From assembly GCA_964035545.1 (NCBI GenBank), contig OZ037765.1:34806080-34870079 (forward strand): a stretch of DNA of 64,000 bases, read 5' to 3'. The notes beneath the pieces were generated by a model. That model was not told the DNA's origin and searched no databases. It saw nothing but the letters and a program-made list of their open reading frames with translations. Source of the stretch: Bugula neritina. Its lineage: Eukaryota; Animalia; Bryozoa. The position numbers and the translations under genes were made by a program. Positions 25,036 through 64,000 of this stretch are shown here, one piece after another (the first letter of the stretch is position 1; each line of letters begins with the position of its first letter).

Positions 25036-25625
25036 AAGATTTGAGTTCATAGCAGATAAAGTATTTACAGTATTTAATTATATCTTATAACTAACATTTC
25101 ATTACTTGTAGATGTTTCTGTTATGATAACTTACCTACAGGGAAGTGCAGAATAATATACAATGATACATCCCTGTGTGTATGGAGCTCATATTCAGAGT
25201 TGATTGTTACTCTCTACTATACAGTAACTTGGTGAGTAAATCGATATGATTATTATTATATTATACATTACTTAGAACTAGTTCAGAGTATATAGAATAA
25301 TGTGATTGACTGTTACTCTCTACTATACAGTAACCTGGTGAGTAAGTCAATTTGATTATTATTATATTATACATATTCTACACTTTAACGTACTGTTACT
25401 AACTACTGTAGTTGTCTCACCATGATCTTATACACTCCTATGTTGATTGATAACTCATAATTATTGTGAGGATTCTAATAAAAACTGGTATGGTATTTAA
25501 ATATTATAGTAAAAGAAAGTTGACTCATTATTTAGTAGATCTGGTTTAAAATACATTGTCATGGTTGTTACAGATGAGAATGAAGACTATTGAATACAAC
25601 TAGAGCTGTAACCTGTGACTACAGG

Positions 25626-25806
25626 ATGGGTCAACGTAAATCTCGACCTCAGCCTACACCTGCACCTCGAACTCCACCTACACCCCCACCTCCACTTACA
25701 CCTACATCTAGACCTGCACTTAGACCTAGACCTACCCCTGCACCTCAACCTCCACCTACACCTCGAACTCTACCAACACCTACATCTAGATCTCAACCTA
25801 CACCTG
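25626..25806 (+). CDS. First coding exon of the LRR-Roc-COR-caspase gene: MGQRKS plus Pro/Thr-rich stalk
   Basis: ATG at 25626, donor G/GTTAGT at 25807; phase 1 fits the next exon. Confidence 0.7.
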
Positions 25807-28800
25807 GTTAGTAAATCAATAACTTATACACAGTGTGTCAAATTAATTCTGTAAGAAGTTAGTAAATACTGAATGAGTTTCAGTGATAAGGAAAGTTTCA
25901 CTGGTTGTATTCCATTTAGGAGCAGTAGTGGAGAAATTGAGATAGCCCAAGTTCTTTAAATTTCTTTATAGATTGTGGTTTGGGGCACGGGTTGAAATTA
26001 TTGCGAGAACATAACTTCTTTTGCTACATTTCTAATCTTTCTCAATTTCTCCATTACTGCACCTACCTCTTGTATTCAATGTAACTGGCCCCGTGTGATA
26101 TATTTATTGTGTACTTGCTGATAAACTTGCTGATAAAAACTAAATAAAATAAAACAAGAGTTATATAAATGATTGCATGCATAAATGGGGTTAAAAATAT
26201 CAAAGTAATGCTCACAAAAACTATGTACAAGAAAAGCCATAAAAGTATTTATTACAAAATAATAATTCAGATGATATAATAATATGGATAAAAGTAACCA
26301 ACCTCTTGGGTCTTTCATACACAGCACCAATATAATTATTATATTGAACAACCAGAATAAAATGATACAGTTTTGCTGCCAACTAATTCTAATAAGTTTA
26401 CCAAGAATTTATATACTATGGCTGCTGTTACTGTACCAGGCAAAAATATTGTCCCTAAAATACCACAATGATTGTGTCCCAAAACATAGTGAACATTCAC
26501 TGGGTAGCCTCAGGGTATCAACTTAGCTTAGTAGAGGTAGGACAAGAATGATAGACACCTCAACCACAACGCCTGACCACATATCTAATAGTCAGCACAA
26601 GGCAGATGAGTAATGCCTGCTGACGTATGTCACCTAAACATAAAGAAGAAGTTAATGGGGTGATGAGGTCAATAGTTATTTATAGTGGGTAATACACAAC
26701 CAGTTACATTCAGTAACCAAAGTTTCTGTCATGTCACAGCTACAGTACATCTTCTGTCTATAGATGTGGTGTGGTGTGAGTTTATGTTGTAAACAAAAGA
26801 AAACGATAAGTTAAAATACATGCACACGCGCACGCACGCACACGCACGCACACGCACACACACGCACACACACTTATATTCATATAAGCTAAAGTTAAGG
26901 TATTTCAACATGATTTACTGGCCAGTGGTATACTGTGTATAATCAGTTAGTCAAACTGATTATTATTATTTATAAAGTGGTGGATATTTTGTAGAGAAGT
27001 ACTGGGTGTGGTTCAACACATCCAGTATAGATGGAGCTGATGATGAGTGGATGGAGAATGATACTACACCCTACACTATAGAAGAGATCAAGAATAAAAG
27101 TAGACATCATACAGTGACTCATGTTATACTGAAGTATGGCATTCCTCCAAATATCAACACACTGTTTCCTCATCTCACACATCTGAGGGTATCTGGAATA
27201 TTCGCATGTCATAACTGGACCAGGTATTATATTGTGTCTAACACATGCATGCAGTATAAGAGAAGAAAATGAGAATTTCTTATCAGTGGTGACTATTCAT
27301 ACTGTTAGCTAGTATTTAGTGACTATTCATACTGTTAGCTAGTATTTAGTGACTATTCATACTGCTAGCTAGTATTTAGTGACTATTCATACTGCTAGCT
27401 AGTATTTAGTAACTATTCATACTGCTAGCTAGTATTTAGTGACTATTCATACTGCTAGCTAGTATTTAGTGACTATTCATACTGCTAGCTAGTATTTAGT
27501 GACTATTCATACTGCTAGCTAGTATTTAGTGACTATTCATACTGCTAGCTAGTATTTAGTGACTATTCATACTGTTAGCTAGTATTTAGTGACTATTCAT
27601 ACTGCTAGCTAGTATTTAGTGACTATTGATACTGTTAGCTAGTATTTAGTGACTATTCACACTGCTAGCTAGTATTTAGTGACTATTCATACTGCTAGCT
27701 AGTATTTAGTGACTATTCATACTGCTAGCTAGTATTTAGTGACTATTCATACTGCTAGCTAGTATTTAGTGTCTATTCATACTGCTAGCTAGTGTTTAGT
27801 GACTATTCATACTGCTAGCTAGTATTTAGTGACTATTCATACTGTTAGCTAGTATTTAGTGACTATTCATACTGCTAGCTAGTATTTAGTGACTATTCAT
27901 ACTGCTAGCTAGTATTTAGTAACTATTCATACTGCTAGCTAGTATTTAGTGACTATTCATACTGCTAGCTAGTATTTAGTAACTATTCATACTGCTAGCT
28001 AGTATTTAGTGACTATTCATACTACTAGCTAGTATTTAGTGACTATTCATACTGCTAGCTAGTATTTAGTGACTATTCATACTGCTAGCTAGTATTTAGT
28101 GACTATTCATACTGCTAGCTAGTATTTAGTGACTATTCATACTGCTAGCTAGTATTTAGTGACTATTCATACTGCTAGCTAGTATTTAGTGACTATTCAT
28201 ACTACTAGCTAGTATTTAGTGACTATTCATACTGCTAGCTAGTATTTAGTGACTATTCATACTGCTAGCTAGTATTTAGTGACTATTCATATACTGCCAG
28301 CTAGTATTTAGTGACTATACATACTGCTAGCTAGTATTTAGTGACTATACATACTGCTAGCTAATATTTAGTGAATATTCATACTGCTAGCTAGTATTTA
28401 GTGACTATTCATACTGCTAGCTAGTATTTAGTAACTATTCATACTGCTAGCTAGTATTTAGTGACTATTCATACTGTTAGCTAGTATTTAGTGACTATTC
28501 ATACTGCTAGCTAGTATTTAGTGACTATTCATACTGCTAGCTAGTATTTAGTAACTATTCATACTGCTAGCTAGTATTTAGTGACTATTCATACTGCTAG
28601 CTAGTATTTAGTAACTATTCATACTGCTAGCTAGTATTTAGTGACTATTCATACTACTAGCTAGTATTTAGTGACTATTCATACTGCTAGCTAGTATTTA
28701 GTGACTATTCATACTGCTAGCTAGTATTTAGTGACTATTCATACTGCTAGCTAGTATTTAGTGACTATTCATACTGCTAGCTAGTATTTAGTGACTATTC

Positions 28801-31800
28801 ATACTGCTAGCTAGTATTTAGTGACTATTCATACTACTAGCTAGTATTTAGTGACTATTCATACTGCTAGCTAGTATTTAGTGACTATTCATACTGCTAG
28901 CTAGTATTTAGTGACTATTCATACTGCTAGCTAGTATTTAGTGACTATTCATACTGCTAGCTAGTATTTAGTGACTATTCATACTGCTAGCTAGTATTCA
29001 GTGACTATTCATACTGCTAGCTTGTATTTAGTGTCTATTCATACTGCTAGCTAGTATTTAGTGACTATTCATACTGCTAGCTAGTATTTAGTAACTATTC
29101 ATACTGCTAGCTATAGTATTTAGTGACTATTCATACTGCTAGCTAGTATTTAGTGACTATTCATACTGCTAGCTAGTATTTAGTGACTATTCATACTGCT
29201 AGCTAGTATTTAGTGACTATTCATACTGCTAGCTAGTATTCAGTGACTATTCATACTGCTAGCTTGTATTTAGTGTCTATTCATACTGCTAGCTAGTATT
29301 TAGTGACTATTCATACTGCTAGCTAGTATTTAGTAACTATTCATACTGCTAGCTATAGTATTTAGTGACTATTCATACTGCTAGCTAGTATTTAGTGACT
29401 ATTCATACTGCTAGCTAGTATTTAGTGACTATTCATACTGCTAGCTAGTATTTAGTGACTATTCATACTGCTAGCTAGTATTTAGTGACTATTCATACTG
29501 CTAGCTAGTATTTAGTGACTATTCATACTGCTAGCTAGTATTTAGTGACTATTCATACTGCTAGCTAGTATTTAGTGACTATTCATACTGCTAGCTGTAT
29601 TTAGTGACTATTCATACTGCTAGCTAGTATTTAGTGACTATTCATACTGTTAGCTAGTATTTAGTGACTATTCATACTGTTAGCTAGTAGTTAGTGACTA
29701 TTCATACTGCTAGCTTGTATTTAGTGTCTATTCATACTGCTAGCTAGTATTTAGTGACTATTCATACTGCTAGTTAGTATTTAGTGACTATTCATACTGT
29801 TAGCTAGTATTTAGTGACTATTCATACTGTTAGCTAGTAGTTAGTGACTATTCATACTGCTAGCTTGTATTTAGTGTCTATTCATACTGCTAGCTAGTAT
29901 TTAGTGACTATTCATACTGCTAGCTTGTATTTAGTGTCTATTCATGCTACCAGCTAGTATTTAGTGACTATTCATACTGCTAGCTAGTATTTAGTATTAT
30001 AGTATATAGAATGATACTGTAATAAATATGATATCCTATCACCAAATCATCTATCTAGTTCTCAATCTATCATATATTAGTATTTAGGTTATCTTTAGAG
30101 TTATCTTTGTTTTCATATCTGTATGTTATGTTACAGCATATCTTCACTGGAGAATCTTGAGGTATTGAATATATCATTTAATAGCCTATCTGAAAGTCTA
30201 CCTGAAGGTCTACCTGACAATATATTCACATCCTTACTATCATTGAGAGAGTTGAACATGAGGCGCTGTGAACTGTCAACTCTACCAAACAGGTGTGTAT
30301 TATATTATAGTGTAGAATGATACTGTAATATATATAATATCTCATCAGTAACTCAGCAACTGTCTGTATACATAGCAAAGGTTTCTACAGTTACACTCAG
30401 GTTGAAGATATTCTGTTGAGACTTAAAGAATCCATGACACACTTTACTTATATAGCATGAAAATATTCATCTATACCTTAGCTATCATCTAATCATCCTT
30501 TTAAGGGTGGATGGCTAGACTACTTTGTTTTATAACAAGTTTAGTGCATGCATGTCCAAAAAACTTTCGGATTTCTGAGCTCTCAGTACACACGTATTAC
30601 GCCGCTTCCGGTCGGCTTCGAGTCCTAGTTACTATGTAACTAATAGTAATAATTGCATACTTTCCACAGCGTGTTATTTTTAGCCACTGCAACACATAGG
30701 TCAATCACTGAACTGGCATACAATTTAAAACATAGAGTACAACTATGCCCAATGAAAAAAACAAATGCTACCATTTTATCATTCATATTAAGAGCTAAAG
30801 TTACTTCCGTTAGAAATTTTAAGCATCGGAAAAATCAAATAGCCTCACCTCCACGATGTAATTAGAACGGGTGGTTAGGTACGGCGATAACACGATATTG
30901 TTAAAAGAAATTAGCTAAATCCAACGAGTGGTAAACTTTTCTATAAAACATTACAAATAATTATGTAACTTATTACACTGCCTTACAAATAGATTATCAT
31001 TACCGTAACCGGATATTACCAATATAACGCGTGCCTAGTAGTACTACTAGTAGTAGTCGCTCGCTATCTGTATAAATTCGATTTCATGTTGCCATTGGAC
31101 TCTAACGAACAAACTTATTACTTATATTACTAGTTACACTTACTGTGAACATGACTACACGAGTGGTTTCTAGCTCTAAAGGCAAATGCAAAAGAAGAAT
31201 GTGTGAAGCTGCAATGTGTTCGTACAAAGAAAAGCACCTGTTTAAATGGCCTGCTGATACTCATACTGTGTGTGGTGAAAAATGGACCAAGTTTGTCAAT
31301 GTGAAAAGAAAAGATTTTCTGCCTGATAACAACTCTCGTTTGTGTTTTCAGCATTTTAATGATGAACAATTTACAAACATGGGCATGTATAAAGCAAAGC
31401 TCATTAACATGTAAGTGAATAACTCCCTCAAACTCATATTGATACTCATACTGATATACTGATGCAGTGATTGTGACACTGACTGTGATAGAATTAGACG
31501 ATAATGATGGTTCTTTTGATGTTGATTTTCAACAACAAGTATAACTATAACTATTACGTATTACTAAAAGTTGGTATAAGTCAATAGGATCGTCATGACC
31601 GTGTTGATTCAATTTCATGTGATTATCACTTTGAAAAACTTGCAAGTACAAGTTTGCATTTATGATTTACACGATAACCATTATTGTAAGGGAATTCATA
31701 ATGGTGATAATATGAAAGACTTATAATTATCAGAATGTGTCATAGTCACTTGGATACATACCATTAATATTATTATATTAATATTATGATTCATACGCAC

Positions 31801-49800: not shown

Positions 49801-52800
49801 TCCAATCCTGTGGTACCTCTTCGTTTCTCCATGACTCTGTGATGAGTTCAGTAAGCCTCAGTATAAGCTCCGCACCACCTTTCTTCAACAGCTCAGGATG
49901 AATACCATCAACTCCTGGTGACTTCCTATCAGAGAGCGCATTTACAGCTCTCATAACCTCTGTGACATCGGGACATTCATTCATCCATTCTTGGGTTGCC
50001 TGTTGGTGTATGTGACTGGTGATGTTAGGGTCCACATTTCCTGTTTCATTTAAGAGTGTTCGGAAGTGCTCTGTCCATCTCTGCATCAAATCATCTGTCT
50101 GGGTGAGGAGGGTGTGGTTGTCCTTGTCATACAGTTGGTCTGGGTGGTTTACACGTGGACCCCAGACTGCTCGCAGGTTTTCGTAGAAGCCTCTCGTGTC
50201 ATTTCGGTTAGCCAGTTCCTGCAGTTCAGCTGCCTTGTCTTGCCACCATTTGTTCTTTAGTTCACGGCATTTCTTTTGAAGTGCTCTGTTACATTCCTTG
50301 TACCTTCCTTTGGTTTTCCTGGTCAATCGGTTCATGACAGCAGAACGTGCTAGGTTCCTCTCACTTATTAGGTCTTGTAGTTCTATGGAGTGTTCATCAA
50401 ACCAGTCCCCGTGTTTTCTGCCAACAGTGCCTAGCTTCTCCTTCGATGTTTCATAAACTGTGTTCTTGAAGCTTTTCCATGCGTCGTCAAGTGTTCCAGG
50501 TGTTCTCAAGCTCAGTTTCTCACTTAGGGCTGTTTTCAAGTCATCAAGTATTTCCTTATCTTTCAGTTTGTTGACGTTGAGCTTTTTACTTGGTTGTTTA
50601 GACTTCTTCATTTTCCTTTTGATGATGAGGCTAGTGCGTGATTTTATCATGATATGGTCTGTGTTGCAGTCTGCCCCACGCATTGCTCTGGTGTCATGTA
50701 TGTCCTTCAGATCACGTTGACGGGTGATGACATAGTCAATCAGGTGCCAATGCTTGGATCGGGGGTGCATCCATGAGTTCTTGTGGGCTGGCTTATGTTT
50801 GAAAAAAGTGTTGGTGATTGCAAGTTGAAATTGGTTGCAAAGGTTCAGAAGACGCTCACCATTAGCGTTGATTTTCCCAGAGCCGTGCATTCCTATGACA
50901 TTTTTCCAGGTAGAAAAGTCGTCACGTACCCGAGCATTAAAATCACCCATAAGGATGATTTTGTCAGAGATATGGATATCTCTCAGCGTCTGGTTGAGCT
51001 GGTCATAAAAGCCATCAATACTTCCAGGAGCATTGGTCATTGTTGGGGCATAGATTGTTATGATGGTACAGTAACGGTCATGTTTCAGTGGTAGTCTCAA
51101 TGTCATAATTCTGTCATTCACAGGTTTAGGATCCTCGCAAAGTTTTAATGTGATGTTGTTGCTGATGGCTAGTCCTACGCCTGATTCGCTCTTCTCTGAT
51201 GATGGTTTCCCACTCCAGTAGATAGTATTTCCACTCTCCTCACGTATACAGCCGCTCTCAGCAAATCGCACTTCACTCAGTGCAGCAATGTCTATTTGGT
51301 AGTTTGACAGCACCTTCGATATAATGGCGCTTCTTCTTTCTGGTCGTTCAGCGTGTGAACGGTCTAGCATCGTTCTGATGTTCCATGATGCCAGGTTAAG
51401 TTTAATATGGGGTTGGACCTTTTTATCCTAGGCGACGTCCGGCCAGTATGAGTATTCTTTCTTTTGTGACTTCATGATACAACATGTGCTGGCAAGAATT
51501 TGTGAGGCTACTGTGTGGTTTGCCAGTTGGCACAGCAGCCCTCTCCACTATGCAGTGTCAATTGAGCTGGCAAGGATTATCCAAGACGAGCTCAGACTCT
51601 GAGTAGTCGCAGTGACCGGCCGGATATAATTCATCAAGTGAAGAATAACCGCCCTTGCAGGATGTCACAAGCCTGTCTTTTCTGTCTGGGTGTAGCTCCC
51701 ATAGATCCCTGAGCCGTTAGCCTGGTAGAACCAGTTACCAGTGGTGACCACGAGGAGGTGCCTCAGAGTCTTGATGATTGGTGACTTCACCAGTTTTTAC
51801 TTCGTCGCCTCAGCATCCTTGGAGTGTCTTCCTTCACTTTAGTAAGTTTGGCAGACATCCACCACCATTATTATAAACTGGTAAATAATGTAGGACTGTA
51901 TAAAGCTGTGTTAGCCCACCTGTCAAACTGCTACCATTTTTTGGTCGTGCAAATTCTATTACTTTGATACTGATAGGGTCTGAGTTTGTAGCTTTTAGTC
52001 TCGTTTCTAATATTTATTATCATAGCACTCACTCTAGCACTCCATACCAACCATATGAAACTCAGGCAGATTAGAATGTTGCTGTCCTCACCATGTAACT
52101 GATATTTCATATACCTGTATGTTATGTTACAGCATGTCTTCACTGAGGAATCTTGAGGTATTCAATATATCAAGGAATAACCTATATGAAGGTCTACCTG
52201 ACAATATATTCACATCCTTACTATCATTGAGAGAGTTGAACATGGAGAACTGTGAACTGTCAACTCTACCAAACAGGTGTGTATTATATTATAGTGTAGA
52301 ATAATACTGTAATATATATATATAATATCTCATCAGTAACTCAGCAACTGTCTGCATACATAGCAAAGGTTTCTACAGTTAACACTCAAGTTGAGGATGT
52401 TCTGTCAACATTTAAAATTATTCAAAGTTATTCTATAAAACTCATTTGTTAACTGGCATTTTAACTTAACCAGTTCTAAGTCTATGATTTGTCTATACAA
52501 GAAACTGCTTTCTCTGTTTGTTAGAGTTATCTTCCCTCTAATATAACCAACTGTCACTCACACTTCTGTTATGTCATATTGGACCTCTGCAGTTCAAACC
52601 AAGCTGTCACACAACTTATTTAAATTCTCTCCAAATTCTCATTTACTACTTGACTACTAACTGACTTCGTTAATTCTCAGTCTATGATTTACCAAATCCT
52701 AGACTACAGAATGAGTTCATACCTGTATGTTGTTTTACAGCATATTTTCACTGAAGAATATTGAGGTATTGAATATATCAGATAATAACCTATCTGAAGG

Positions 52801-55800
52801 TCTACCTGACAATATATTCACATCCTTACCATCATTGAGAAAGTTGTACATGAATTACTGTGAACTGTCAACTCTACCGAACAGGTGTGTATTATATTAT
52901 AGTGTAGAATGATACTGTAATAAATATATATATTGTTCTTGCAAATTATATTACTTTGATACTGGAAAGGTCTGAGTTTGTAGTTTTTAATCTCGTTTCT
53001 AATATATATTATCATATCACTCACTCTAGCACTCCATACCAACCATATGAAACTCAGGCAGATTAGAATGTTGCTGTCCTCACCATGTAACTGATATTTC
53101 ATATACCTGTATGTTATGTTACAGCATGTCTTCACTGAGGAATCTTGAGGTATTCAATATATCAAGGAATAACCTATCTGAAGGTCTACCTGACAATATA
53201 TTCACATCCTTACTATCATTGAGAGAGTTGAACATGTTGCGCTGTAAGCTGTCAACTCTACCAAACAGGTGTGTATTATATTATAGTGTAGAATGATACT
53301 GTAATATATATAATATCTCATCAGTAACTCAGCAACTGTCTGTATACATAGCAAAGGTTTCTACAGTTACACTCAAGTTGAGGATAGTCTGTTGAGACTA
53401 GAGCTAAGCTGTCAGCGTGTCAGCATTTTCCATGATATTTTCTTAATTCTGTGTATTTCCTGCCTGTTTTAGCTGTGAGTCATTTAGGAAGGCGAATTGC
53501 ATTTTTGTTGGTTAGAAGGGATAGGATTTCTACTTGATAGCTTACCATGTGTACAGTACTAATTCCTGTGTACTCTGAAGCTAGGATATTTCTGATCAGC
53601 TATCAGATTTACAAATTGTTAGATGCTACAGAATTTGGGGTTTAGAGTTCAGACAATAGTTTGTATACAAACACTGCACCCTACGACCCCAAGCTTTGTG
53701 CTGCATTCATCAATTCCCATCAGATTTTATCCCATGCAGTTGTTGGTTGTTGAGTGCTGATTGGCTGAGTTGTTCCGCTTGTATCACGTGCTGCAAGCCT
53801 GAATGTTTTCTCTTTTACTGGAAGTTCATTTATTCAGTTTAAAAAACCACAATCATAAACATGAAGGGTGGTTTGCCTTCTTCCATCTATAAGTAGAACA
53901 TATAATTGGTTGTTGAATGCAAACAAGTCTGACCCTCCTACCTGTCAGGGACTTGAAGTGAATATCTTTCAACCATTGGTTGGTGAGTAATATCTCTGTG
54001 CATAACACAGATGTTACAGGATTTAATTCACTTAGCCATATCTCTACACAGAGCTGGCCACCAGAAGTGGTGCTGAGTCCTCACTCTACACTCATGTACC
54101 CCCTGATGGCCCTTGTGACACATTTCTAAATATCCTGACTGTAGAAAGACTAGGGAATGTACACCCTGGACTTGTACATTAGCATGTTATTATAAGCTTG
54201 TAAATAATGTAGGACTGTATAAAGCTGTGTTAGCCCACCTGTCAAACCGCTACCATTTTTTGGTCGTGCAAATTCTATTACTATTATACTGATATGGTCT
54301 GAGTTTGTAGTTTGTAGTGTCGTTTCTAATATTTATTATCATATCACTCACTCTAGTACTCAATACCAACCATATGGATCTCAGACAGATTAGAATGTTG
54401 CTAACCTCACCATGTAACAGATCTTTCATACCTGTATGTTATGTTACAGCATGTCTTCACTGAAGAATCTTGAGGTATTGAATATATCATGGAATAAGCT
54501 ATCTGAAGATCTACTTGACAATATATTCACATCCTTACTATCATTGAGAAAGTTGAACATGAGTTACTGTGAACTGCCAACTCTACCAAACAGGTGTGTA
54601 ATATATTATAGTGTAGAATGATACTGTAATATATATATAATATCTCATCAGTAACTCAGCAACTGTCTGCATACATAGCAAAGGTTTCTACAGTTAACAC
54701 TGAGGTTGAGGATACTCTGTTAGGACTTAAGCTAAGCTGTCAGCATTTAAGCATTTTCCATGATAATTTTTTATTTCTGTGTATTTTCCACCTGCTTTTA
54801 GCTGTGAGTCATTCAGGGAGGTGAATTGCATTTTTGTTGGTTAGAAGGGATAGGATTTCTACTTGATAGCTTACCATGTGTACAGTACTAATTCCTGTGT
54901 ACTCTGAAGCTAGGATATTTCAGATCAGCTATCAGATTTACAAATTGTTAGTTGCTACAGAATTTGGGGTTTAGAGTTCAGACAATAGTTAGTATACAAA
55001 CACTGCACCCCACGACCCCAAGTTTTGTGCTGCACTCATCAATTCCCATCAGATTTTATCCCATGCAGTTGTTGGTTGTTGAATGCTGATTGGCTGATTT
55101 GTTCTGCTTGTATCACGTGCTGCAAGCCGGAATGTTTTCTCTTTTGCTGGAAGTTCATCTATTCAGTTTAAAAAACTACAATTATAAACATGAAGGGTGG
55201 TTTGCCTTCTTCCATCTATAAGTACAACATATAATTGGTTGTTGAATGCAAACAAGTCTGACCCTCCTACCTGTCAGGGACTTGAAGTGAATATCTGTCA
55301 ACCATTGGTTGGTGAGTAATATCTCTGTGCATAACACAGATGTTGCAGGATTTAATTCACTTAGCCATATCTCTACACAGAGCTGGCCACCAGAAGTGGT
55401 GCTGAGTCCTCACTCTACACTCATGTACCCCCTGATAGCCCTTGTGACACATTTCTAAATATCCTGACCGTATAAAGGCTAGGGAATATAAAGGTCTGAG
55501 TTTGTAGCTTTTAGTCTCGTTTCTAATATGTATTATCATAGCACTCACTCTAGTACTCAATACCAACCATATGGATCTCAGACAGATTAGAATGTTGCTA
55601 ACCTCACCATGTAACAGATATTTCATATCTGTATGTTGTGTTACAGCATATCTTCACTGAGGAATCTTGAGGTATTGAATATATCAGATAATAACCTATA
55701 TGAAGGTCTACCTGACAATATATTCACATCCTTACTATCATTGAGAGAGTTGAACATGGAGAACTGTGAACTGTCAACTCTACCAAACAGGTGTGTATTA

Positions 55801-58800
55801 TATTATAGTGTAGAATGATACTGTAATATATATATAATATCTCATCAGTAACTCAGCAACTGTCTGCATACAAAGCAAAGGTTTCTACAGTTACACTCAA
55901 GTTGAGGATATTCTGTCAACATTTAAAATTATTCAAAGTTATTCTATAAAACTCATTTGTTAACTGGCATTTTAACTTAACCAGTTCTCAGTCTATGATT
56001 TGTCTATACAAGAAACTGCTTTCTCTGTTTATTAGAGTTATCTTCCCTCTAATATAACCAACTCTGTCACTCACACTTCTGTTATGTCATATTGGACCTC
56101 TGTAGCTCAAACTAAACTGTCACACAACTTATTTAAAGTTTCTCCAAATTCTCATTTACTACTTGACTAATAACTGACTCCGTTAACTCTCAGTCTATGA
56201 TTTGCCAGATCCTAGGCTATAGAATGAGTTCATACCTGTATGTTATGTTACAGCATGTCTTCACTGAGGAATCTTGAGGTATTGGATATATCAAGGAATA
56301 ACCTATCTGAAGGTCTACCTGACAATATATTCACATCCTTACTATCATTGAGAGAGTTGGACATGGGGTACTGTAAACTGTCAACTCTACCAAACAGGTG
56401 TGTATTATATTATAGTGTAGAATAATACTGTAATATATATAATATCTCATCAGTAACTCAGCAACTGTCTGCATACATAGCAAAGGTTTCTACAGTTACA
56501 CTCAGGTTGAGGATATTCTGTTGAGACTAGAGCTAAGCTGTCAGCATTTAAGCATTTTCCATGATAATCTTTTATTTCTGTATCATGTGCTGCAAGCCGG
56601 AATGTTTTCTCTTTTACTGGAAGTTCACCTATTCAGTTTAAAAAAGTGCAATTATAAACATGAAGGGTGGTTTGCCTTCTTCCATCTATAAGTACAACAT
56701 ATAATTGGTTGTTGAATGCAAACAAGTCTGACCCTCCTACCTGTCAGGGGCTTGAAGTGAATCTTTCAACCATTGGTTGGTGAGTAATATCTCTGTGCAT
56801 AACACAGATGTTGCAGGATTTAATTCACTTAGCCATATCTCTACACAGAGCTGGTCACCAGAAGTGGTGCTGTGCCCTATCTCTACATTCATTTACCCCC
56901 TGATGGCCTTGTGGCACATTTCTAAATATCCTGACTGTAAAGACTAGGGAATATACACTCTGGACTTGTACATTAGCATATTATTATAAGCTGGTAAATA
57001 ATGTAGGACTGTATAAAGCTGTGTTAGCCCACCTGTCAAACTGCTACCATTTTTTGGTCGTGCAAATTCTAATACTTTTATACTGATAGGGTCTGAGTTT
57101 ATAGTTTGTAGTGTCGTTTCTAATATTTATTATCATATCACTCACTCTAGTACTCAATACCAACCATATGGATCTCAGACAGATTAGAATGTTGCTAACC
57201 TCACCATGTAACAGATATTTCATATATGTATGTTGTGTTACAGCATGTCTTCACTGAAGAATCTTGAGGTATTGAGGATATCATGGAATAACCTATCTGA
57301 AGGTCTACCTGACAATATATTCACATCCTTACTATCATTGAGAGGGTTGAGCATGCAGAGCTCTGAACTGCCAACTCTACCAAACAGGTGTGTATTATAT
57401 TATAGTGTAGAATGATACTGTAATAAATATAATATCTCATCAGTAACTCAGCAACTGTCTGCATACATAGCAAAGGTTTCTACAGTTACACTCAGGTTGA
57501 GGATATTCTGTTGAGACTAGAGCTAAGCTGTCAACGTGTCACATTTAAGCCATTTTCCATGATAATTTTTTAATTTTATGTATTTCCCCGAATTGCATTT
57601 TTGTTGGTTAGAAGGGATAGGATTTCTACTTGATAGCTTACCATGTGTACAGTACTAATTCCTGTGTACTCTGAAGCTAGGATATTTCAGCTCAGCTATC
57701 AGATTTGTGACACATATCTAAATATCCTGACTGTAGAAAGACTAGGGAATGTACACCCTGGACTTGTACATTAGCATATTATTATAAGCTGGTAAATAAT
57801 GTGGGACTGTATAAAGTTGTGTTAGCCCACTTGTCAAACTGCTACCATTTTTTGGTCGTGCAAATTCTATTACTTTGATACTGATAGGGTCTGAGTTTGT
57901 AGCTTTTAGTCTCGTTTCTAATATTTATTATCATAGCACTCACTCTAGTACTCAATACCAACCATATGAAACTCAGGCAGATTAGAATGTTGCTAACCTC
58001 ACCATGTAACAGATATTTCATATCTGTATGTTGTGTTACAGCATGTCTTCACTGAAGAATCTTGAGGTATTGAATATATCAGGGAATAACCTATCTAAAG
58101 GACTACCTGACAATATATTCACATCCTTACTATCATTGAGAGAGTTGACCATGAGGAACTGTAAACTGCCAACTCTACCAAACAGGTGTGTATTATATTA
58201 TAGTGTAGAATGATACTGTAATAAATATATCATCAGTAACTCAGCAACTGTCTGCATACATAGCAAAGGTTTCTACAGTTACACTCTGGTTGAGGATATT
58301 CTGTTGAGACTTAAGCTAAGCTGTTAGTAATTTCTATGACATCACAGCTGCCATAAGGCTTTGGTTTACTGGTCATAAAATAATTTAAGCTTTCATTAGT
58401 TTATGTATTTGAATTTTTAATAATTTGGCTCAAAGTTTGGGTATCTAATAAATTTTATCTAGCAAAAATAGAAGCAGAATAAGTGGTAGTAAAATTATCA
58501 TTGAACGTCAACACTGACTCAACCATGTTTTTTTACACTTTCATGCAGCTGGTAGAATTGAAAACACAATTGTTTTCTTTTTTGTTCAATGCAAGACAAC
58601 TTTGTACGGGTTGCATAGGAAGGAGTAGTTTTTTATTCAATTCCATGGAAGAGTAGCACATTGGATAAAGTTATGTTAGCAGATTTAACTAAATACTTTT
58701 ATTCATTTTCACCCTTACTATTGTAAGTTATGTAGATAATACCAAATCTAATTTTAATTAGTGGAGTATTAGATATACTACCCAGCTGCAGGCTAGGATA

Positions 58801-61800
58801 GCTATACAATAACTATTTACAGTGTGCAGTAATATATATATTATGTGGTATAAACAGAAATAATTATTAAGATATGATTATTAGATTGTGTGAACAATGC
58901 ATAGAATACTGTGATATCTGGTAACAACATTTACCAGATATCCACAAAATATATATTTCTATATCAACAAACCCTGCCTTTGTTTGAACTCTCTATTATT
59001 TGTGATGTTTACCAAAGCAGTTCATACAAAGGTCAAGGATACATTCTTTAACTATAATATATAACCATTCTATAACTTTCTATATTACCCATTAATGTAA
59101 TGAATATATTTGCAATGTTAACTTCTAGACATTATCACTCAACAAAGAGGGTGCTCTTATTTTTGCATGAAGTCAAATTTTTGATATAAAAGTTATCATG
59201 TGATAGTAAAGACACTACAACTTGTACTGACAGTGTATAGTGTTCTATTTACTAGCATGCAGAGTCTACAGAAGTTGGAGATACTGGAAATACCAGATAA
59301 TAAGTTCACCAGTTTACCATCTCCTGTGTGCCCACTGAGTAGTCTGCAGAAACTGAATATATCCTCCAATAAGTCCCTGACATCCTTAGATCCTGAGATA
59401 CTACAGCTAACTCAACTTCGTACACTGTATGTATATGGTTGTAATGCTCTCACCTCTCCTCCACCAGAAGTATGTGAGAGAGGAGTAGATGCTGTGAGAC
59501 AATATTACACAGACTTGGCTGAAGGTGCTGGTAGAAGTCTTCCATTTGCTACTATAGCTGTGCTGGGTAATACGATGGCTGGGAAGACCAGTCTAATCAG
59601 AACATTACAGAATGCTGGCCGAAAGAGAGTTCTGACCGACAGAGGACCAGATGCTGTGAGAGATGAGACAACAAAGGTGTTTAATGTTGAAGAAGTGGAG
59701 GTGGATGGTACAGTACTCCGTGTCATTGATATGGGAGGCCAGGAGGTCTACCATATCACCTATCAACTGACACTGAGACAGAACTGTATTCCAGTCATAG
59801 TAGTCAACATGGAACAGTATGAGGAGATTTCAAGTGAATCAACACACAGAGAAGCTGTTAGAAGATTAGCCTTTGATTACATGTCTCACCTCTATCTGGC
59901 TAACCCAACTCTGGGTGCTCCAAAACTTATCTTCACACATAAAGATAAGTTTCAAAATGCAGAATTCCAGAAGCTTCGAAAAAACTTTCTAGAAACTTCC
60001 AATCAACTGTGTGAGGAAATGATTAGAGAAGAGAAAGCATTGGGTGGAAAATTTGCTCAAATCAAACATTTTAGTGAATCAACTGAAGGAGTCTTTCTTG
60101 GTGAGGACATTTATGAGGTGGGGAAAGATGATACGTATGAAGTGTTTGACCTGATCAAGGAGTCTCTTCTTCAAAGCAGTCAACATTTTGTGAAACCTTT
60201 ACCTTTGGTCTGGGAGGAAATGAATGAAAAAGTGCTCTCTATTTCCTCTGTGTACAGCACTTTTGATGAGATACTGAACTATGTGCAAACCGAACTTCAA
60301 CACATTGAGTCAAGTCAGCTGGACATAATCCTCACACACATGCATGACTGCGGCAAAGTCTTGTGGTATAAAGATATCAGCTCTCTCCGGCCATACATAT
60401 TCCACAAAATTTCACAAGTCACCAAACTTCTCTGTGTCTTGTATCATCATGATCCTAGCATATGGCAGAGTAGAGTTGACAAGTTCCAGCCATGTTTTTC
60501 AGAGGACGGGATGCCTGTTGAAAAAGAAGACTTTGAGAGATTTGTTAATCATTTCACTGAGACTGGTTTGATGATGCAATGCCTTCTCATTCATCTGGTT
60601 AAACAAGAAACATTATTTACCAGTCTGGAAGACGTAGAAGTTGCTGTTTGCTTGCTTCGCACATTCCGTTTGTTATATGGTCCTTTACCTGGTGATTCCA
60701 AGGAGCCCTGCTTTATTGTTCCCCAGTTTGCTAACGACCTCTTTGATACCTCTCACTCCTCACCAAAAAACATGCTCCTTCGAGTTGAAACTAAATTCAA
60801 TGGTCTAGCCCTGCCACACTATGTTTACCACCAGATGATTGTTGGGTTGTTGGAGCTGTTTCCAGACGAGTTTGCCGTGATTGAAGTGAGAAGAAATGGA
60901 GCCAATGTCTATCAAGATGGGATCTACACACAGCTGGTACACGACTATACATCTAGAAAGGTGTTGCTCTACGTATCATCTAATGCTGCCAACATCAGCA
61001 GAATGTGGGAGAGACTCATCACCGCCAACAAAAACATCCTTAGACATGTTCTAGAAACTTGGACGGCAAGTAGACCAGTCACTACATGCTACTGTGCTCA
61101 CTGTCTTCTGCTAGGACTTCCTTGTCCTAAGAAAGTGATGAATCCTCCATGGTGTCTTCGTTCCTTGAAACATTCCACACCACGTCCCGGACTGTGTAGT
61201 GGATCTTCAACAACTCTGTGTGGTTATGAGGAGATACCGAGTGCTTTTCTCTATCCATGTATGTTTACATTCAGTTTGAAGTGAATATCTAGTTTTGCTC
61301 GCTTTCAGCAGTCTTTCCACTATTTATGTTCTGATAGTAATAAACATATAACTTCCATGTGGTAACTGACAGTTTTTCATTCTCTAGGCAGTCCTCTCTC
61401 TCCAGAAGAAGCTGATAACATAAAAGAACGCGTCAACAAACTGAGATCTGCAAGAGAAGAGACTGCTTCAACTGTCCCTGGTATGATCAGTTTTCTATCA
61501 TAAACTGTCACTGTTAGAAGTAACATCCTCTGCCTGAGCTCAGTCATATGTAAACAGCAATAGACAAGAACTCATGACACTCAGTTATATAGAACAAGAT
61601 CACTCAGCTTCAGTTATTGTAATTGATCTATATAATTACTGATTAAAAGTGGAAAATATGATTCTGTTCCTGGTTTACAGTCATTTTGATACTTAGTATA
61701 TCTTTTACTTATTAGCACTGAACATATCTCCTTTTTTGTTTATTTTAGTACTGGGTGAAGATGATAACCTCAGTGAATGCTCTGATGTAGAAGAGGAAGG

Positions 61801-64000
61801 ATATGCTGATTTTACTAAAGATGACCTTGAACCTTTCATATCTCTAGTTGAGGGTATGCAGCTGAAACCTACCATCAGTGAACGAGTTAGACAGAAGTTT
61901 GACAACCACCAGCAGGTAAAGCAAATAATATTGTCTCTGACTATTTCCTAAATCATTGAATATTTTTTGAAAAATATTGGGTTACATCACATAATTTCAA
62001 AAAAATGTGATTTTTATTCTATTTATCCACTTTTAGTAAGATAAAATTGATTGGTTTACAGGTTTATGCGATGAGTAACCCTGTTAGAGGTCGTGTCATG
62101 ATCATAAACAATGAGAGATTCTTTAGAGATGATGGCAGTGAACTGACTGAGGCAACCCGAGATGGTTCATACATTGACTTTGTTAACATCAAAACTCTGT
62201 TGAAAGACATGGGATTTGTTGTAGCCAATGAAGCTGATCCTCTGTTTGACCTGAGTAAACAGGTTACTGTATCAATCTCTTATCTTTTTGTGTAGTTCAT
62301 TCTCCCTAGGGCCTATAGACTGTCACTAGCTGTCAAATACTATCCAGTACAGAGATGTATTGTAGTCCAACAAGTCTACACCATGGTGTTCAAATTAATA
62401 GTGTTATAATTTTACAATTATAGTGCGTGGGTTCTATTGTGCGTAGCTAGTATTCACTTCTAGTTAAGCAATCACTTGGGTAGTAGCCGGATAATAGTCT
62501 TTATTATTTAACTCAAACACAATACAAAACATCACTCTAAATTACAATACAACAATAGCCATATAATACGTGCATTCAATCTGAGTCCTCGCTCACGACA
62601 GCCTAACTATACGGAGGAACTCTCACTTGCCAAGAGCCCGCCTTCAAGTCCTTCTCATTGGATGGTTTGCCGTGACCTTTCTCCTATAAATGTGTCCTTT
62701 AGTATTCTCCAAACAGAAGGAAGATAATTCTACATTATTATATTATGCAAATCCACCACAATAGTTTTTGTCAGTTTTGATTTTTAGTTTAGCACTACTT
62801 ATTATTTTACCTTTGTGATAAATATTTCAATATAGCTTTGAAGCAGCTTTGGCTTGGGTGTAGACACATTTACTTATCCTAACTTGCTTTTACACACCAT
62901 TATATGCTTTTATTTTGCCAGGAGATATTATCAGAAGTGAGGAAGGAGACCACCCACAGAGACCACAAAGATCTTGGCATGTTCATTCTAGTCATCATGT
63001 CACACGGAACTTCTGGAAACATCTTCTATGACAGACACTGTAAACCTGTCAACTTGTCAGAAGTCAAAGATTTACTCTCAGCTAGTAAATTTTCTGCCAT
63101 GAGAGGAAAACCCAAACTCATCATCTTCCATGCCTGTTCTGGCAGTGAGTAATGCAGAGTTGTTCCTCATGTTACTAGAACTAGCAGTTATATTGCATAA
63201 TTTCCTATAACTATTACATTAATTAACTTAAGAAATCATTATTTTCAAGATGCCTAATGTTATTGGAGTATGCCTATGTGGAAGTGAGCTACACCTCATA
63301 ACTAGAATTCAATAAACAGTGCTGTGTAATAGAGTTCTGCTTGTGAATCCAGTCCTAAGTTATTACTCACTATCATACCACAGAGTCTACATTATATGTA
63401 TTTCGTATACAGGCAGAGCTGACTTTGGTAATGCTGCACAGTCACAAAGCCCAGACACCGTCTCACCACCAACACCAACCCCTCTACCCTCATCTTCTGC
63501 AACAGCTGGGAGTGAGTCTTCTGCAGGTCAACATGTGTCTCCAAATATTCACTTTGATAGATTCACTCACCTGGATGCTGATGACTTCTACATTGTGAAG
63601 CCAAGTACAGAAAGTTAGTGAGAAGAAAATTATATTTGAGTTGACTGAAACTTATATAATTTGCACAAATTAAAATATTTGTTGCATGTAAACAAAATTG
63701 TTGCAAGTTTTAAATATAAAATAATTTACATAATAATTTGACATTCATATTTAACTGCTCATTTTCATGTGTTACAGCTTACAAGGCTGGTAGGAATGAG
63801 AATTATGGTACCTGGTTTATCAGAGTACTGGTGGCTACATTCTACAGACACAGCTGTCACAGAGATGTTAGTGAGCTGTTTAGGATAGTAAGTACTTCAG
63901 TATTACTCTTTGTATGATACTGTGGAGTGTGTTGAGTCATCAGCTTTATATTTCTCTTCTATTTATACTTACAGATACAAGACAGAGTTAGAAGAGTCAG
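25626..64000 (+). CDS. LRR-Roc-COR-caspase fusion protein (ROCO family with C-terminal caspase), 3' end beyond the window. Exons: 25626-25806, 26995-27223, ten LRR exons (30137-58185), 59256-61258, 61388-61480, 61749-61915, 62062-62262, 62922-63144, 63413-63613, 63778-63887, 63975-64000+
   Basis: All junctions are GT-AG with compatible phases (1, 2, 2...2, 1, 1, 0, 0, 1, 1, 0), giving 4860 nt = 1620 codons to 63887 with no stop seen. Roc G1 GNTMAGKTS, G3 DMGGQ, G4 THKD; caspase RGRVMIINN, RDGSYID, SHG, GKPKLIIFHACSG, GTWFI. Confidence 0.85.
25920..26068 (-). mobile_element. MITE-like element, copy 2 (inverted relative to 24542-24700)
   Basis: Same TIRs; the internal sequence is the reverse complement of copy 1 (ATGTAGCAAAAGAAGTT vs AACTTCTTTTGCTACAT). 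Confidence 0.6.
26995..27223 (+). CDS. Second coding exon (N-cap plus degenerate LRR, LFPHLTHLRVSG)
   Basis: TTTTGTAG acceptor and AG/GTATTA donor; enters in phase 1 and exits in phase 2, matching the LRR exons. Confidence 0.75.
27288..29995. repeat. Intronic minisatellite, 30-bp unit (GTGACTATTCATACTGCTAGCTAGTATTTA), about 90 copies
   Basis: Directly visible. Confidence 0.96.
30137..30292 (+). CDS. LRR cassette exon 1 (156 nt; carries a 12-nt internal duplication)
   Basis: TTACAG/C...AG/GTGTGT, phase 2-2; ISSLENLEVLNISFNSLSESLPEGLPDNIFTSLLSLRELNMRRCELSTLPN. Confidence 0.88.
31151..32358 (+). pseudogene. THAP-domain N-terminus of the Kolobok transposase (exons about 31151-31410, 31925-32082, 32215-32358)
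   Basis: CEAAMC...LFKWP...W...RLCFQHF spliced to LHLEKTAVPTI (THAP AVPTI box); no catalytic domain follows. Confidence 0.8.
34412..34716 (+). repeat. Gypsy 5' LTR
   Basis: TGTGGTGG...TATAACA, repeated at 41612-41916. Confidence 0.95.
34718..34735 (+). promoter_or_regulatory. Primer-binding site, complementary to a tRNA-Leu 3' end
   Basis: TGGTGGCAGCAGTGGGAT one base after the LTR; resembles the reverse complement of eukaryotic tRNA-Leu ...ATCCCACYGCTGCCACCA. Confidence 0.75.
34748..35701 (+). CDS. gag: Gypsy Gag
   Basis: 317 aa; PTFTG motif and CCHC knuckle CWECGNQGHFRRYC. Confidence 0.92.
   Translation: METENAGTQPPAIEGERRDNAVETMPVNHVVEERRVPRELAEDRYRLKAPTFTGEEEVEQFIQEFSDVMDVAQWPPRVALLKLRMALMDKAKPYGLGVDIDNIFASLRARFGLSATDARARLQRLRRDPCTPLREHAAAVMKLAQIAYSDLPPVNRERYTLDAFIASVDDLGLHHQFLARGVTTVEDALTEGEAYLLANQMHKSRGSSRQVEIDRADTAAGQGEETSAAAAVSQLATASKVTQLTDMLAKLIAKLTPQNPVSTAPEPMRPSAPPQGETVSFCWECGNQGHFRRYCPFLNQGLNYRGPQMFPPSAGRR
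35698..39992 (+). CDS. pol: Gypsy Pol (PR-RT-RNaseH-IN), interrupted by a -1 frameshift at about 38745
   Basis: LIDSG protease, YLDD RT, DTDAS RNaseH, HKQAH..CEIC zinc finger; the core VDLVGP...HSDQG...ERNNR continues in the other frame. Confidence 0.93.
40536..41323 (+). CDS. Extra ORF3 of the Gypsy element: C2H2 zinc finger plus coiled-coil protein, probably spliced
   Basis: Open for about 260 codons after a TTTTTCAG acceptor; CQICGEDCASHRSLKLHVNAH; no signal peptide or TM segment seen. Confidence 0.7.
41612..41916 (+). repeat. Gypsy 3' LTR
   Basis: Matches the 5' LTR; I saw no differences. Confidence 0.95.
43535..43860 (-). mobile_element. Decayed Gypsy-type integrase fragment; part of the repeated LRR intron module (other copies near 48050-48370, 53870-54280, 55190-55490, 56660-57080, partial 57710-57870)
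   Basis: HKGHQGVHECRVRAQHHFWWPAL..D....CNIC (IN H2C2 finger); other copies add GSDLFAFNNQLYVVLID. Confidence 0.8.
44246..44389 (+). CDS. LRR cassette exon 2 (144 nt, phase 2-2)
   Basis: MSSLKNLEVLHISRNNLSEGLPDNIFTSLLSLRELNMENCKLSTLPN; intact AG/GT. Confidence 0.88.
45548..46576 (-). CDS. Polinton ORF: Zn-ribbon, parvovirus-VP1-like PLA2 domain and DDE integrase (3' truncated)
   Basis: YCCKC..CSQC; HYPGHNFLGPGT..D.ED..A..HDICY; WAADLVD, LTVIDVFSKY, WVDKEKEF, VERWNRT. Confidence 0.85.
   Translation of the reverse strand: MYCCKCKIKTKTLNYGERVSKNNRLMGYGNCSQCGCKKTTFVGSGLASNLINNLPIELHYPGHNFLGPGTKLNKRLNDDMTPKEWSKPVDREDAIAMKHDICYAINKDTKTRNEICDENMLNELKAIPNPTSTEQRHSRIASAIIGTKKRLGWGFRWTDELAEELHKPVQKIFRKRRVWVSGIDETWAADLVDMTEFAKLNNGYKYLLTVIDVFSKYGWMIPLKNKTGKVTALALKTILTRRKPRHLWVDKEKEFYNKDVKSLIDLYSTENEEKSTVVERWNRTMKERMFKYFSANNTYRYIDVLKDLVKRYNETKHSSIGMTPIKGLLNLSLLQSHYNYEL
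46589..47346 (+). pseudogene. Polinton A32/FtsK-like packaging ATPase with premature stops
   Basis: Walker A GKSGCGKT, Walker B IVFDD, RGRH..SQNYF..P..IR.N; in-frame stops at 46718, about 46799 and 47249. Confidence 0.85.
48376..51866 (-). mobile_element. Near full-length RTE-clade LINE
   Basis: Single APE+RT ORF plus about 400 bp of 5' UTR; interrupts the module sequence ATTAGCAT-ATTATTATAA seen intact in sister introns. Confidence 0.92.
48401..51370 (-). CDS. RTE endonuclease-reverse transcriptase (989 aa from the first Met)
   Basis: LSEVR, MGDFNA, IDY, TDH (APE); QCGFR, DFTKAFD, GVKQGCVLAP, FADD, YLGS (RT). Confidence 0.95.
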   Translation of the reverse strand: MLDRSHAERPERRSAIISKVLSNYQIDIAALSEVRFAESGCIREESGNTIYWSGKPSSEKSESGVGLAISNNITLKLCEDPKPVNDRIMTLRLPLKHDRYCTIITIYAPTMTNAPGSIDGFYDQLNQTLRDIHISDKIILMGDFNARVRDDFSTWKNVIGMHGSGKINANGERLLNLCNQFQLAITNTFFKHKPAHKNSWMHPRSKHWHLIDYVITRQRDLKDIHDTRAMRGADCNTDHIMIKSRTSLIIKRKMKKSKQPSKKLNVNKLKDKEILDDLKTALSEKLSLRTPGTLDDAWKSFKNTVYETSKEKLGTVGRKHGDWFDEHSIELQDLISERNLARSAVMNRLTRKTKGRYKECNRALQKKCRELKNKWWQDKAAELQELANRNDTRGFYENLRAVWGPRVNHPDQLYDKDNHTLLTQTDDLMQRWTEHFRTLLNETGNVDPNITSHIHQQATQEWMNECPDVTEVMRAVNALSDRKSPGVDGIHPELLKKGGAELILRLTELITESWRNEEVPQDWKDAQLVTIFKKGDRRICGNYRGISLLSIPGKVFARILLNRLTQHIEQFLPEAQCGFRAGRGTSDMIFSLRQIQEKCIEQNMPLYMIFIDFTKAFDTVNRLTLWMVLRKLGCPDQFTNLIAALHTGMKASVNLKGGLSAPFEITNGVKQGCVLAPTLFSIYLTMVMNHAFDGYDKGVWIQSRPGADLFNINQFKSSTRTRKVLIRELMFADDTAFVAHYHQQAQEIITRFAKSAKDFGLKINITKTEMMYQPPPGEYDEGEKISIDGEILNTVKNFKYLGSTITNNNKLDQELQLRMSKASQTFGRLRERVWDNGDLTIKTKCAVYQAIVLPTLLYGVESWTVYKITAHKLNAFLMNQLRQILSVKWWHFVSNMKILQKTNITSLYDTLIQRNLRWAGHVNRLDSTRIPKQVLYSQLTEGSRDIGRPRLRYKDTIKRNLKDKGISLSKWQMLSLDRPRWRLMIHQKS
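52133..52276 (+). CDS. LRR cassette exon 3
   Basis: 144 nt, phase 2-2; VFNISRN...LYEG...ELNMENC. Confidence 0.9.
52741..52884 (+). CDS. LRR cassette exon 4
   Basis: 144 nt, phase 2-2; VLNISDN...KLYMNYC. Confidence 0.9.
53125..53268 (+). CDS. LRR cassette exon 5
   Basis: 144 nt, phase 2-2; VFNISRN...ELNMLRC. Confidence 0.9.
54450..54593 (+). CDS. LRR cassette exon 6
   Basis: 144 nt, phase 2-2; VLNISWN...KLNMSYC. Confidence 0.9.
55647..55790 (+). CDS. LRR cassette exon 7
   Basis: 144 nt, phase 2-2; VLNISDN...LYEG...ELNMENC. Confidence 0.9.
56254..56397 (+). CDS. LRR cassette exon 8
   Basis: 144 nt, phase 2-2; VLDISRN...ELDMGYC. Confidence 0.9.
57244..57387 (+). CDS. LRR cassette exon 9
   Basis: 144 nt, phase 2-2; VLRISWN...GLSMQSS. 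Confidence 0.9.
58042..58185 (+). CDS. LRR cassette exon 10
   Basis: 144 nt, phase 2-2; VLNISGN...ELTMRNC. Confidence 0.9.
59256..61258 (+). CDS. Large exon: terminal LRRs, Roc GTPase and COR
   Basis: Three LRRs, then PPPEVCERGVDAVRQY (typical ROCO LRR-Roc linker), GNTMAGKTS, DMGGQEVYHITYQ, FTHKD, W...L..MHDCGKVLWY (COR) and CYCAHC. Confidence 0.93.
62062..64000 (+). CDS. Caspase (peptidase C14A) domain exons, p20 and partial p10
   Basis: YAMSNPVRGRVMIINN, TRDGSYID, MSHG, GKPKLIIFHACSG, DF, YKAGRNENYGTWFI, DVSELF..IQDRV. Confidence 0.92.

What the first reader, a model, noticed from the sequence alone, without database searches (positions are those of the whole stretch)
25626..64000. Single-chain LRR-Roc-COR-caspase: candidate all-in-one sensor/GTPase/protease immune receptor
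Seen: 20 exons splice in frame from MGQRKS through about 23 LRRs, an intact Roc (G1/G3/G4) and COR, into a caspase domain with the His/Cys dyad. No stop, new start, CARD or DED intervenes. Established: ROCO proteins (LRRK2, MFHAS1, DAPK1) carry kinase, death or no C-terminal effector, many dimerise through COR, and initiator caspases are activated by induced dimerisation. Inference: ligand binding to the LRRs gates Roc-COR dimerisation, which directly activates the fused caspase. That would be an adaptor-free inflammasome/apoptosome analogue using a GTPase in place of NACHT/NB-ARC. I do not know of a characterised protein with this architecture but cannot search to confirm novelty.
Basis: partly seen in the sequence, partly recalled or inferred. 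Interest (0 to 1): 0.95.

Follow-up and report, generated by a model that had tools for sequence, protein, structure and literature searches.

The report
Bryozoan LRR-Roc-COR-caspase fusion gene
This is a real spliced gene of a moss animal (bryozoan) that joins a fast-changing leucine-rich-repeat surface, a Roc-COR GTPase switch and a complete caspase protease in one protein. The same design is also in another bryozoan, in amphioxus and in bacteria, but I found no experimental study of it.

Summary
Confirmed. Twenty exons (19 GT..AG introns) give 1,628 codons without a stop: an N-terminus with a myristoylation-type motif, about 23 LRRs, Roc-COR (folds like LRRK1/CtRoco), an 87-residue linker without a death fold, and a caspase with the His/Cys dyad. 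The gene runs off the window. RNA contigs of alleles or paralogues show every junction from the last LRR exon through the caspase. A Watersipora (bryozoan) gene has the same exon chain and intron phases. The architecture is not unique: about 10 Watersipora and 11 amphioxus proteins have it, amphioxus 'LRRs-caspase' was noted in 2008, and bacterial LRR-Roc-COR-caspase in 2021. I found no experimental study. The scan has already reported this family many times on other DNA of this genome. The ten LRR exons are recombined modules, diversified on the concave face (pN 0.26, pS 0.04), as in brown-algal ROCOs. Best reading (0.5): an adaptor-free intracellular sensor-protease whose Roc cycle controls caspase dimerisation. 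The direction of the switch is open, because GTP makes CtRoco monomeric. This copy has HACSG where relatives have QACxG. Exons 1-11 lack direct RNA support.

The parts
25626..25806 (+). Exon 1: start MGQRKS (Gly2/Ser6, myristoylation-type) and Pro/Thr-rich spacer; phase 1
   Evidence: G2xxxS6 also in Watersipora P0152, P0156, P0022; not RNA-tested
26995..27223 (+). Exon 2: N-cap before the LRRs; phase 1-2
   Evidence: 30% to P0152/P0155 exon 2, E 3e-4; same phases
30137..30292 (+). Exon 3: LRR pair (156 nt, phase 2-2)
44246..44389 (+). Exon 4: LRR pair (144 nt, phase 2-2)
52133..52276 (+). Exon 5: LRR pair
52741..52884 (+). Exon 6: LRR pair
53125..53268 (+). Exon 7: LRR pair
54450..54593 (+). 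Exon 8: LRR pair
55647..55790 (+). Exon 9: LRR pair
56254..56397 (+). Exon 10: LRR pair
57244..57387 (+). Exon 11: LRR pair
58042..58185 (+). Exon 12: LRR pair; spliced to exon 13 in RNA contigs
59256..61258 (+). Exon 13 (2,003 nt): 3 LRRs, Roc GTPase (G1-G4), COR-A, COR-B, C-terminal CxHC cysteine cluster
   Evidence: same length in Watersipora
61388..61480 (+). Exon 14: linker helix
61749..61915 (+). Exon 15: acidic linker with conserved SDVEEEGY motif (candidate self-cleavage or autoinhibitory site)
62062..62262 (+). Exon 16: caspase large subunit, first part, with S1 Arg (TRDGS)
62922..63144 (+). Exon 17: caspase catalytic His (SHG) and Cys (HACSG; family QACSG)
63413..63613 (+). Exon 18: intersubunit linker and start of small subunit
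63778..63887 (+). Exon 19: small subunit with second S1 Arg (YKAGR)
   Evidence: 50-69% to Watersipora
63975..64000 (+). Exon 20, cut by the window end

Best explanation
An intact member of an expanded bryozoan family of single-chain intracellular sensor-proteases. SHOWN: one spliced chain of variable LRRs, a Roc-COR tandem with intact nucleotide motifs, a short linker with no death fold, and a caspase with the catalytic dyad and both S1 arginines; the LRR exons are duplicated, recombined and diversified on the ligand-binding face. INFERRED: the N-myristoylated protein sits on a cytoplasmic membrane face. Binding of a non-self or damage ligand to the LRRs moves the LRR-Roc hinge and shifts the Roc nucleotide cycle and oligomer state. 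This brings two tethered caspase domains together, they activate by proximity as initiator caspases do, may cut themselves at the acidic linker, and start cell death or inflammatory proteolysis without an adaptor.
For: Frame and splice sites. RNA joints. Identical exon chain in Watersipora and the same linker exons behind a 62% paralogue. Folds. Concave-face pN 0.26 vs pS 0.036, against 0.055 vs 0.024 elsewhere; 324 of 741 site pairs fail the four-gamete test. About 10 Watersipora and 11 amphioxus relatives keep the dyad. Amphioxus swaps caspase, GT4 glycosyltransferase, OTU, death and trypsin tails on the same chassis, as bacterial counter-invader Rocos do (PMC8195603). The best PDB match of the caspase profile is CED-3, but only narrowly ahead of caspase-3.
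Against: No ligand, no activity and no dimer model were obtained. In CtRoco GTP binding gives monomers (PMC5714945, PMC11052575), so simple 'activation = dimerisation' is not the default. This copy has His for the S1 Gln that all compared relatives keep. Young transposons fill introns 3-4. Pairwise pN/pS among nine paralogous exons is not independent data, and flanking intron sites contribute to the four-gamete count. RNA support is at family level.
Confidence: 0.5

Rival explanations
1. Same receptor, opposite switch. The resting GDP or empty COR dimer holds the caspases apart or docked on the acidic linker. GTP-driven opening or monomerisation, then cleavage at the D-x-S-D motif, frees caspase domains that dimerise and act as effectors.
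For: CtRoco cycle (PMC5714945, PMC11052575). The acidic DSDLSDVEEEGY-type motif is conserved in an otherwise divergent, disordered linker. Caspase-3 scores almost as high as CED-3.
Against: Val at P1' is a poor caspase site (own knowledge). Amphioxus fusions lack the motif. A monomer gives no obvious proximity signal.
Confidence: 0.2
2. A variable receptor for self/non-self recognition between colonies or for programmed polypide degeneration, rather than for microbes.
For: The same diversification signature is expected for allorecognition loci. Bryozoans fuse or reject at colony edges and recycle polypides (own knowledge).
Against: Dozens of paralogues and swappable effector tails fit anti-invader families better. 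No expression data by tissue.
Confidence: 0.12
3. The family is functional but this copy is a weak enzyme, decoy or decaying paralogue.
For: Q>H at the S1 pocket. A 7.5-kb sense-strand LTR element with identical LTRs, a Maverick-like piece and a LINE lie inside the LRR array. No RNA test of exons 1-11.
Against: No stop or frameshift in 20 exons. Dyad, both S1 Arg and all G motifs are intact. Many RNA contigs are 99% or more alike over 58-64 kb.
Confidence: 0.13
4. Two neighbouring genes, or a main short isoform ending after COR (stop 61282-61284, AATAAA at 61339), with the caspase made separately.
For: A read-through stop and poly(A) signal exist. Summed depth is lower over the caspase exons in X1 and X4. 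RefSeq lists stand-alone caspases of this family in Watersipora.
Against: The COR-to-linker joint is seen in two studies. Intron phases are conserved across species. One 'stand-alone' caspase lies behind a Roc-COR gene with a Pao retrotransposon in between, so it is a split model. Contig depth cannot rank exons.
Confidence: 0.05

Closest known systems
MFHAS1/MASL1-type ROCO proteins (LRR-Roc-COR); LRRK1/2; CtRoco
   Same: LRR-Roc-COR order, G motifs and fold.
   Different: C-terminal caspase instead of no effector or a kinase; exon-modular hypervariable LRRs; very divergent Roc-COR (long branch).
Amphioxus 'LRRs-caspase' hybrids (Zhang et al. 2008, PMC2575513)
   Same: At least 11 Branchiostoma proteins are LRR-Roc-COR-caspase; the paper proposed a direct link from recognition to apoptosis; four caspase intron positions are shared.
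   Different: The passages I could search do not mention a GTPase, and I could not match the paper's model ids. In the one amphioxus gene mapped, LRR-Roc-COR is one 3.1-kb exon with no acidic linker; caspases are only 27-30% identical.
Bacterial LRR-AP-GTPase-COR-effector conflict proteins (Kaur et al. 2021, PMC8195603)
   Same: Rapidly evolving LRRs, Roc-COR and a variable C-terminal effector that can be a caspase; predicted counter-invader role.
   Different: Prokaryotic and predicted only; here the protease is an animal-type caspase in an intron-rich gene.
Brown-algal ROCO candidate immune receptors (Zambounis et al. 2012, PMC3341825)
   Same: Exon-encoded LRRs, shuffling, diversifying selection, gene birth and death.
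   Different: One LRR per exon there, two here; no caspase is mentioned in the abstract read.
NLR inflammasomes and the Apaf-1/CED-4 apoptosome
   Same: Logic of sensor, nucleotide switch and caspase activation by proximity (works like).
   Different: No NACHT or NB-ARC domain, no death-fold adaptor, GTPase rather than STAND ATPase, caspase fused in cis.

Membership tests
ROCO proteins | Roc GTPase domain with G1-G4 motifs | tested here: met
   Pfam Roc E 6.5e-7; motifs
ROCO proteins | COR domain directly after Roc | tested here: met
   Pfam weak (E 0.052), but the fold matches LRRK1, CtRoco and isolated COR 3dpt
ROCO proteins | GTP binding/hydrolysis and COR-mediated dimer cycle | not testable with these tools
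   only single-chain models available
Caspases (C14A) | His-Cys dyad in SHG and QACxG | tested here: met
   SHG and HACSG; dyad intact, Gln replaced by His in this copy
Caspases (C14A) | Large plus small subunit fold with two S1 arginines | tested here: met
   TRDGS and YKAGR; fold of relative P0152 matches CED-3 and caspases 1, 9, 3; last strand lies beyond the window
Caspases (C14A) | Asp-specific proteolysis | not testable with these tools
   needs an assay; S1 Gln>His makes it uncertain for this copy
Classical initiator caspases | CARD or DED prodomain | tested here: not met
   87-aa linker, no Pfam hit on exon 15, one helix plus disorder in the relative's model
NLR / apoptosome STAND receptors | NACHT or NB-ARC ATPase | tested here: not met
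   the switch is a Roc GTPase
Diversifying pattern-recognition receptors | Diversification of ligand-facing LRR residues and family expansion | tested here: met
Diversifying pattern-recognition receptors | Binding of a microbial ligand | not testable with these tools
   no data
One orthologous bryozoan plus amphioxus ROCO-caspase family | Single origin of the fusion | tested here: inconclusive
   the free tree separates them but AU p = 0.31; caspase introns are shared but may be ancestral to the caspase lineage

The most novel reading that the evidence does not exclude
Bryozoans use a large, exon-shuffled family of membrane-anchored ROCO-caspases as a main intracellular immune receptor class: a one-protein, GTPase-gated inflammasome/apoptosome analogue. 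It would be a non-STAND route from ligand sensing to caspase activation in animals, possibly as old as the bilaterian ancestor given the amphioxus genes.
Probability: 0.35. Interest if true: 0.88.

Novelty: new variant of a known kind. Interest (0 to 1): 0.68.

Why it matters
The well-characterised animal platforms for caspase activation rely on death-fold adaptors, mostly with STAND ATPases or death receptors (own knowledge). A fused Roc-COR switch would be a different solution. It would also give a direct protease read-out for an open question in the LRRK2 field: whether the dimer or the GTP-bound monomer of a Roco protein is the signalling state, and whether LRRs sense ligands that drive this cycle. 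The shuffled two-LRR exons add an animal parallel to brown-algal ROCO diversification.

Tried and rejected
Split-gene or chance adjacency: rejected as the sole product by RNA joints and conserved intron phases. Hidden CARD/DED in the linker: rejected. Uniqueness of the architecture: rejected. Paper searches for an animal LRR-Roc-COR-caspase study found none; the amphioxus caspase, bivalve caspase and two Roco review papers do not mention it in the passages searched. The model ids of the 2008 'LRRs-caspase' genes are in an image and could not be matched. Origin test inconclusive; row P0048 in the first tree was cut at the wrong place and was dropped with P0226 from the second. The automatic intersubunit-linker count failed for several rows and is not used beyond P0046 and P0156. 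The ESM Atlas gave only generic ROCO/MFHAS1 clusters below 0.9. A search for literature on caspase intron positions gave nothing. The repeat finder was swamped by a 30-bp minisatellite. Following the operators' note, the spliced model was searched exon by exon by reference; the joined protein was only translated in a script to check the frame and was never searched or folded, and the multi-domain fold used the Watersipora relative P0152.

Full report
OBSERVATION. The + strand carries 20 exons from 25626 to the window end. All 19 introns are GT..AG, the phases match, and the joined frame has 1,628 codons with no stop. Ten exons each encode two LRRs (144 nt, one of 156 nt; phase 2-2). Exon 13 (2,003 nt) encodes three more LRRs, Roc (GNTMAGKTS, DETT, DMGG, THKD) and COR. 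Pfam sees Roc (E 6.5e-7) and the caspase (E 1.7e-9) but COR-A only weakly. The AlphaFold model of exon 13 (pLDDT 92) matches LRRK1 (1e-22), CtRoco (5e-20), LRRK2 and the isolated COR domain, so COR is real. After an 87-residue linker come the caspase exons with the first S1 Arg (TRDGS), SHG, HACSG and the second S1 Arg (YKAGR). The gene's last 30-35 or so codons, judged by the Watersipora exon, lie beyond the window.

IS IT ONE TRANSCRIPT? Public contigs laid on 58001-64000 show joints at every predicted intron from exon 12 onward, including 61258>61388. That joint appears in X1, and in X4 as a joint with a loose end matching the end of the COR exon. Introns have zero depth in X3 and X5. Independent support comes from another species. 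The Watersipora subatra gene for P0152 has the same exon chain with every intron phase identical and three exons of identical length (2,003, 223 and 110 nt) at 30-67% protein identity. A 62% paralogue in a metagenome contig has the same two linker exons behind its COR exon. One of the 'stand-alone' Watersipora caspases lies behind a Roc-COR gene with a Pao retrotransposon between them, so it is a split annotation. A short isoform ending at the read-through stop (61282-61284; AATAAA at 61339) is not excluded.

ORGANISM AND DISTRIBUTION. The nearest named relatives are all from the bryozoan Watersipora, so the host is very likely a bryozoan; the species was not identified here. Watersipora has about ten full Roc-COR-caspase proteins that differ by more than 10%, labelled MFHAS1-like or uncharacterised. 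Branchiostoma species have at least eleven, beside sister genes that end instead in a GT4 glycosyltransferase, OTU, death or trypsin domain. Lingula, mollusc and hemichordate hits end in CARD, death or nothing. The searches are word-limited, so absence elsewhere is not shown. In trees of Roc-COR the bryozoan genes form one long-branched clade apart from the amphioxus ones, but a single origin is not rejected (AU p 0.31). Four caspase introns are shared with an amphioxus gene. From my own knowledge such positions may be ancestral for CARD-type caspases, so this does not decide the origin.

THE LRR ARRAY. The LRR exons were duplicated together with their intron flanks (88-95% identical blocks up to 1.2 kb). 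Variation is concentrated at the exposed beta-strand positions: pN 0.26 against pS 0.036 there, and 0.055 against 0.024 elsewhere; nucleotide distance is 0.33 at six such codons and 0.047 in the rest. The two halves of each exon have different nearest neighbours, and 324 of 741 informative site pairs (exon plus flanks) are incompatible with one tree, which indicates recombination or conversion. These pairwise figures are not independent, so they are a pattern and not a formal test. The pattern matches brown-algal ROCO genes proposed as immune receptors (PMC3341825).

OTHER ANATOMY. The start MGQRKS has Gly2/Ser6, as do three of eleven Watersipora models inspected (several others look 5'-truncated). 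This suggests N-myristoylation (inference). The linker keeps an acidic motif of the type DSDLSDVEEEGY in all fused bryozoan relatives inspected, within a disordered stretch after one helix and with no death fold. It could be a self-cleavage site or an autoinhibitory patch. Two Watersipora members have no Asp in the intersubunit linker, so cleavage there may be dispensable, as for caspase-9 (own knowledge). The caspase profile scores CED-3 best (7e-35) with caspase-3 close behind, so its class is not settled. This copy has His in place of the S1 Gln that all compared relatives keep.

MECHANISM. Shown: the architecture, splicing at family level, intact motifs, LRR diversification and family expansion. 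Inferred: ligand sensing, membrane location, nucleotide control of caspase proximity, and cell death. I give 0.5 to an adaptor-free sensor-protease activated by proximity. I give 0.2 to the reverse switch, in which GTP opens a resting dimer and releases the caspase, because CtRoco is dimeric when empty or GDP-bound and monomeric with GTP (PMC5714945, PMC11052575). Smaller shares go to this copy being a decoy or decaying (0.13), to allorecognition or developmental death (0.12), and to split products (0.05).

COMPARISON AND NOVELTY. It is a ROCO protein and carries a caspase by the features I could test. It is not an NLR or a CARD/DED caspase, though it probably works like the two combined. Precedents: amphioxus 'LRRs-caspase' hybrids, proposed in 2008 to link recognition to apoptosis, with no GTPase mentioned in the passages searched (PMC2575513); bacterial LRR-AP-GTPase-COR proteins with caspase among 24 effector types (PMC8195603). 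I found no paper that describes the animal four-part architecture or tests it. The scan has reported this family repeatedly on other pieces of this genome; the counts of 50-69 genes given there were not checked here. Verdict: real; a new variant of a known kind; interest 0.68.

METHOD NOTE. The spliced model was searched exon by exon by reference. Mobile and virus-like elements in the introns were only described.

Noticed in passing
window 34410-41916 (+), intron 3: Gypsy-type LTR retrotransposon in the sense orientation, with protease, RT, RNase H and integrase; its two 307-bp LTRs are 100% identical, so the insertion is very recent.
   Followed up: partly
window about 30422-43021, intron 3: DNA transposon with 146-bp terminal inverted repeats (88%) and a THAP-domain fragment at 31106-31411; the LTR element is nested inside it.
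   Followed up: partly
window about 44426-47492, intron 4: 3-kb Maverick/Polinton-like remnant: inverted ends starting AGTAG, flanked by a repeated AATATC, with integrase plus phospholipase-A2-like (45551-46576, -) and A32-type packaging ATPase (46802-47248, +) pieces. It is inserted about 40 nt behind LRR exon 4. Observed only.
   Followed up: partly
window 48404-51427 (-), intron 4; 22112-23242 (-): LINE with endonuclease and RT in a 1,008-codon open frame; a second RT fragment lies upstream of the gene.
   Followed up: partly
window 27289-29990, intron 2: Minisatellite of about 89 copies of a 30-bp unit, about 97% identical.
   Followed up: no
window 60950-61258 (end of exon 13): Near-invariant CxHC plus further cysteines at the end of COR-B in bryozoan, amphioxus, brachiopod and mollusc ROCOs: a possible zinc site between COR and the effector.
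   Followed up: no
window 25574-25603: Short upstream ORF in another frame, and GT/AG sites at 25100-25340 that may be 5' UTR exons.
   Followed up: no
window 6657-7353 (+): Mediator subunit 16 exons (Pfam Med16_bridge, E 6.6e-13).
   Followed up: partly
window 8626-14670 (-) and 18724-18993 (+): Coiled-coil exons that look stathmin-like, and an O-methyltransferase-like exon; named from memory, not tested.
   Followed up: no
P0161-P0225 (amphioxus): One amphioxus LRR-Roc-COR clade swaps C-terminal effectors (caspase, GT4 glycosyltransferase, OTU, death; trypsin in a related clade), which parallels the bacterial systems of PMC8195603.
   Followed up: partly
L002 1-14073: Watersipora 'caspase a-like' model is the tail of a Roc-COR gene interrupted by a Pao retrotransposon.
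   Followed up: yes
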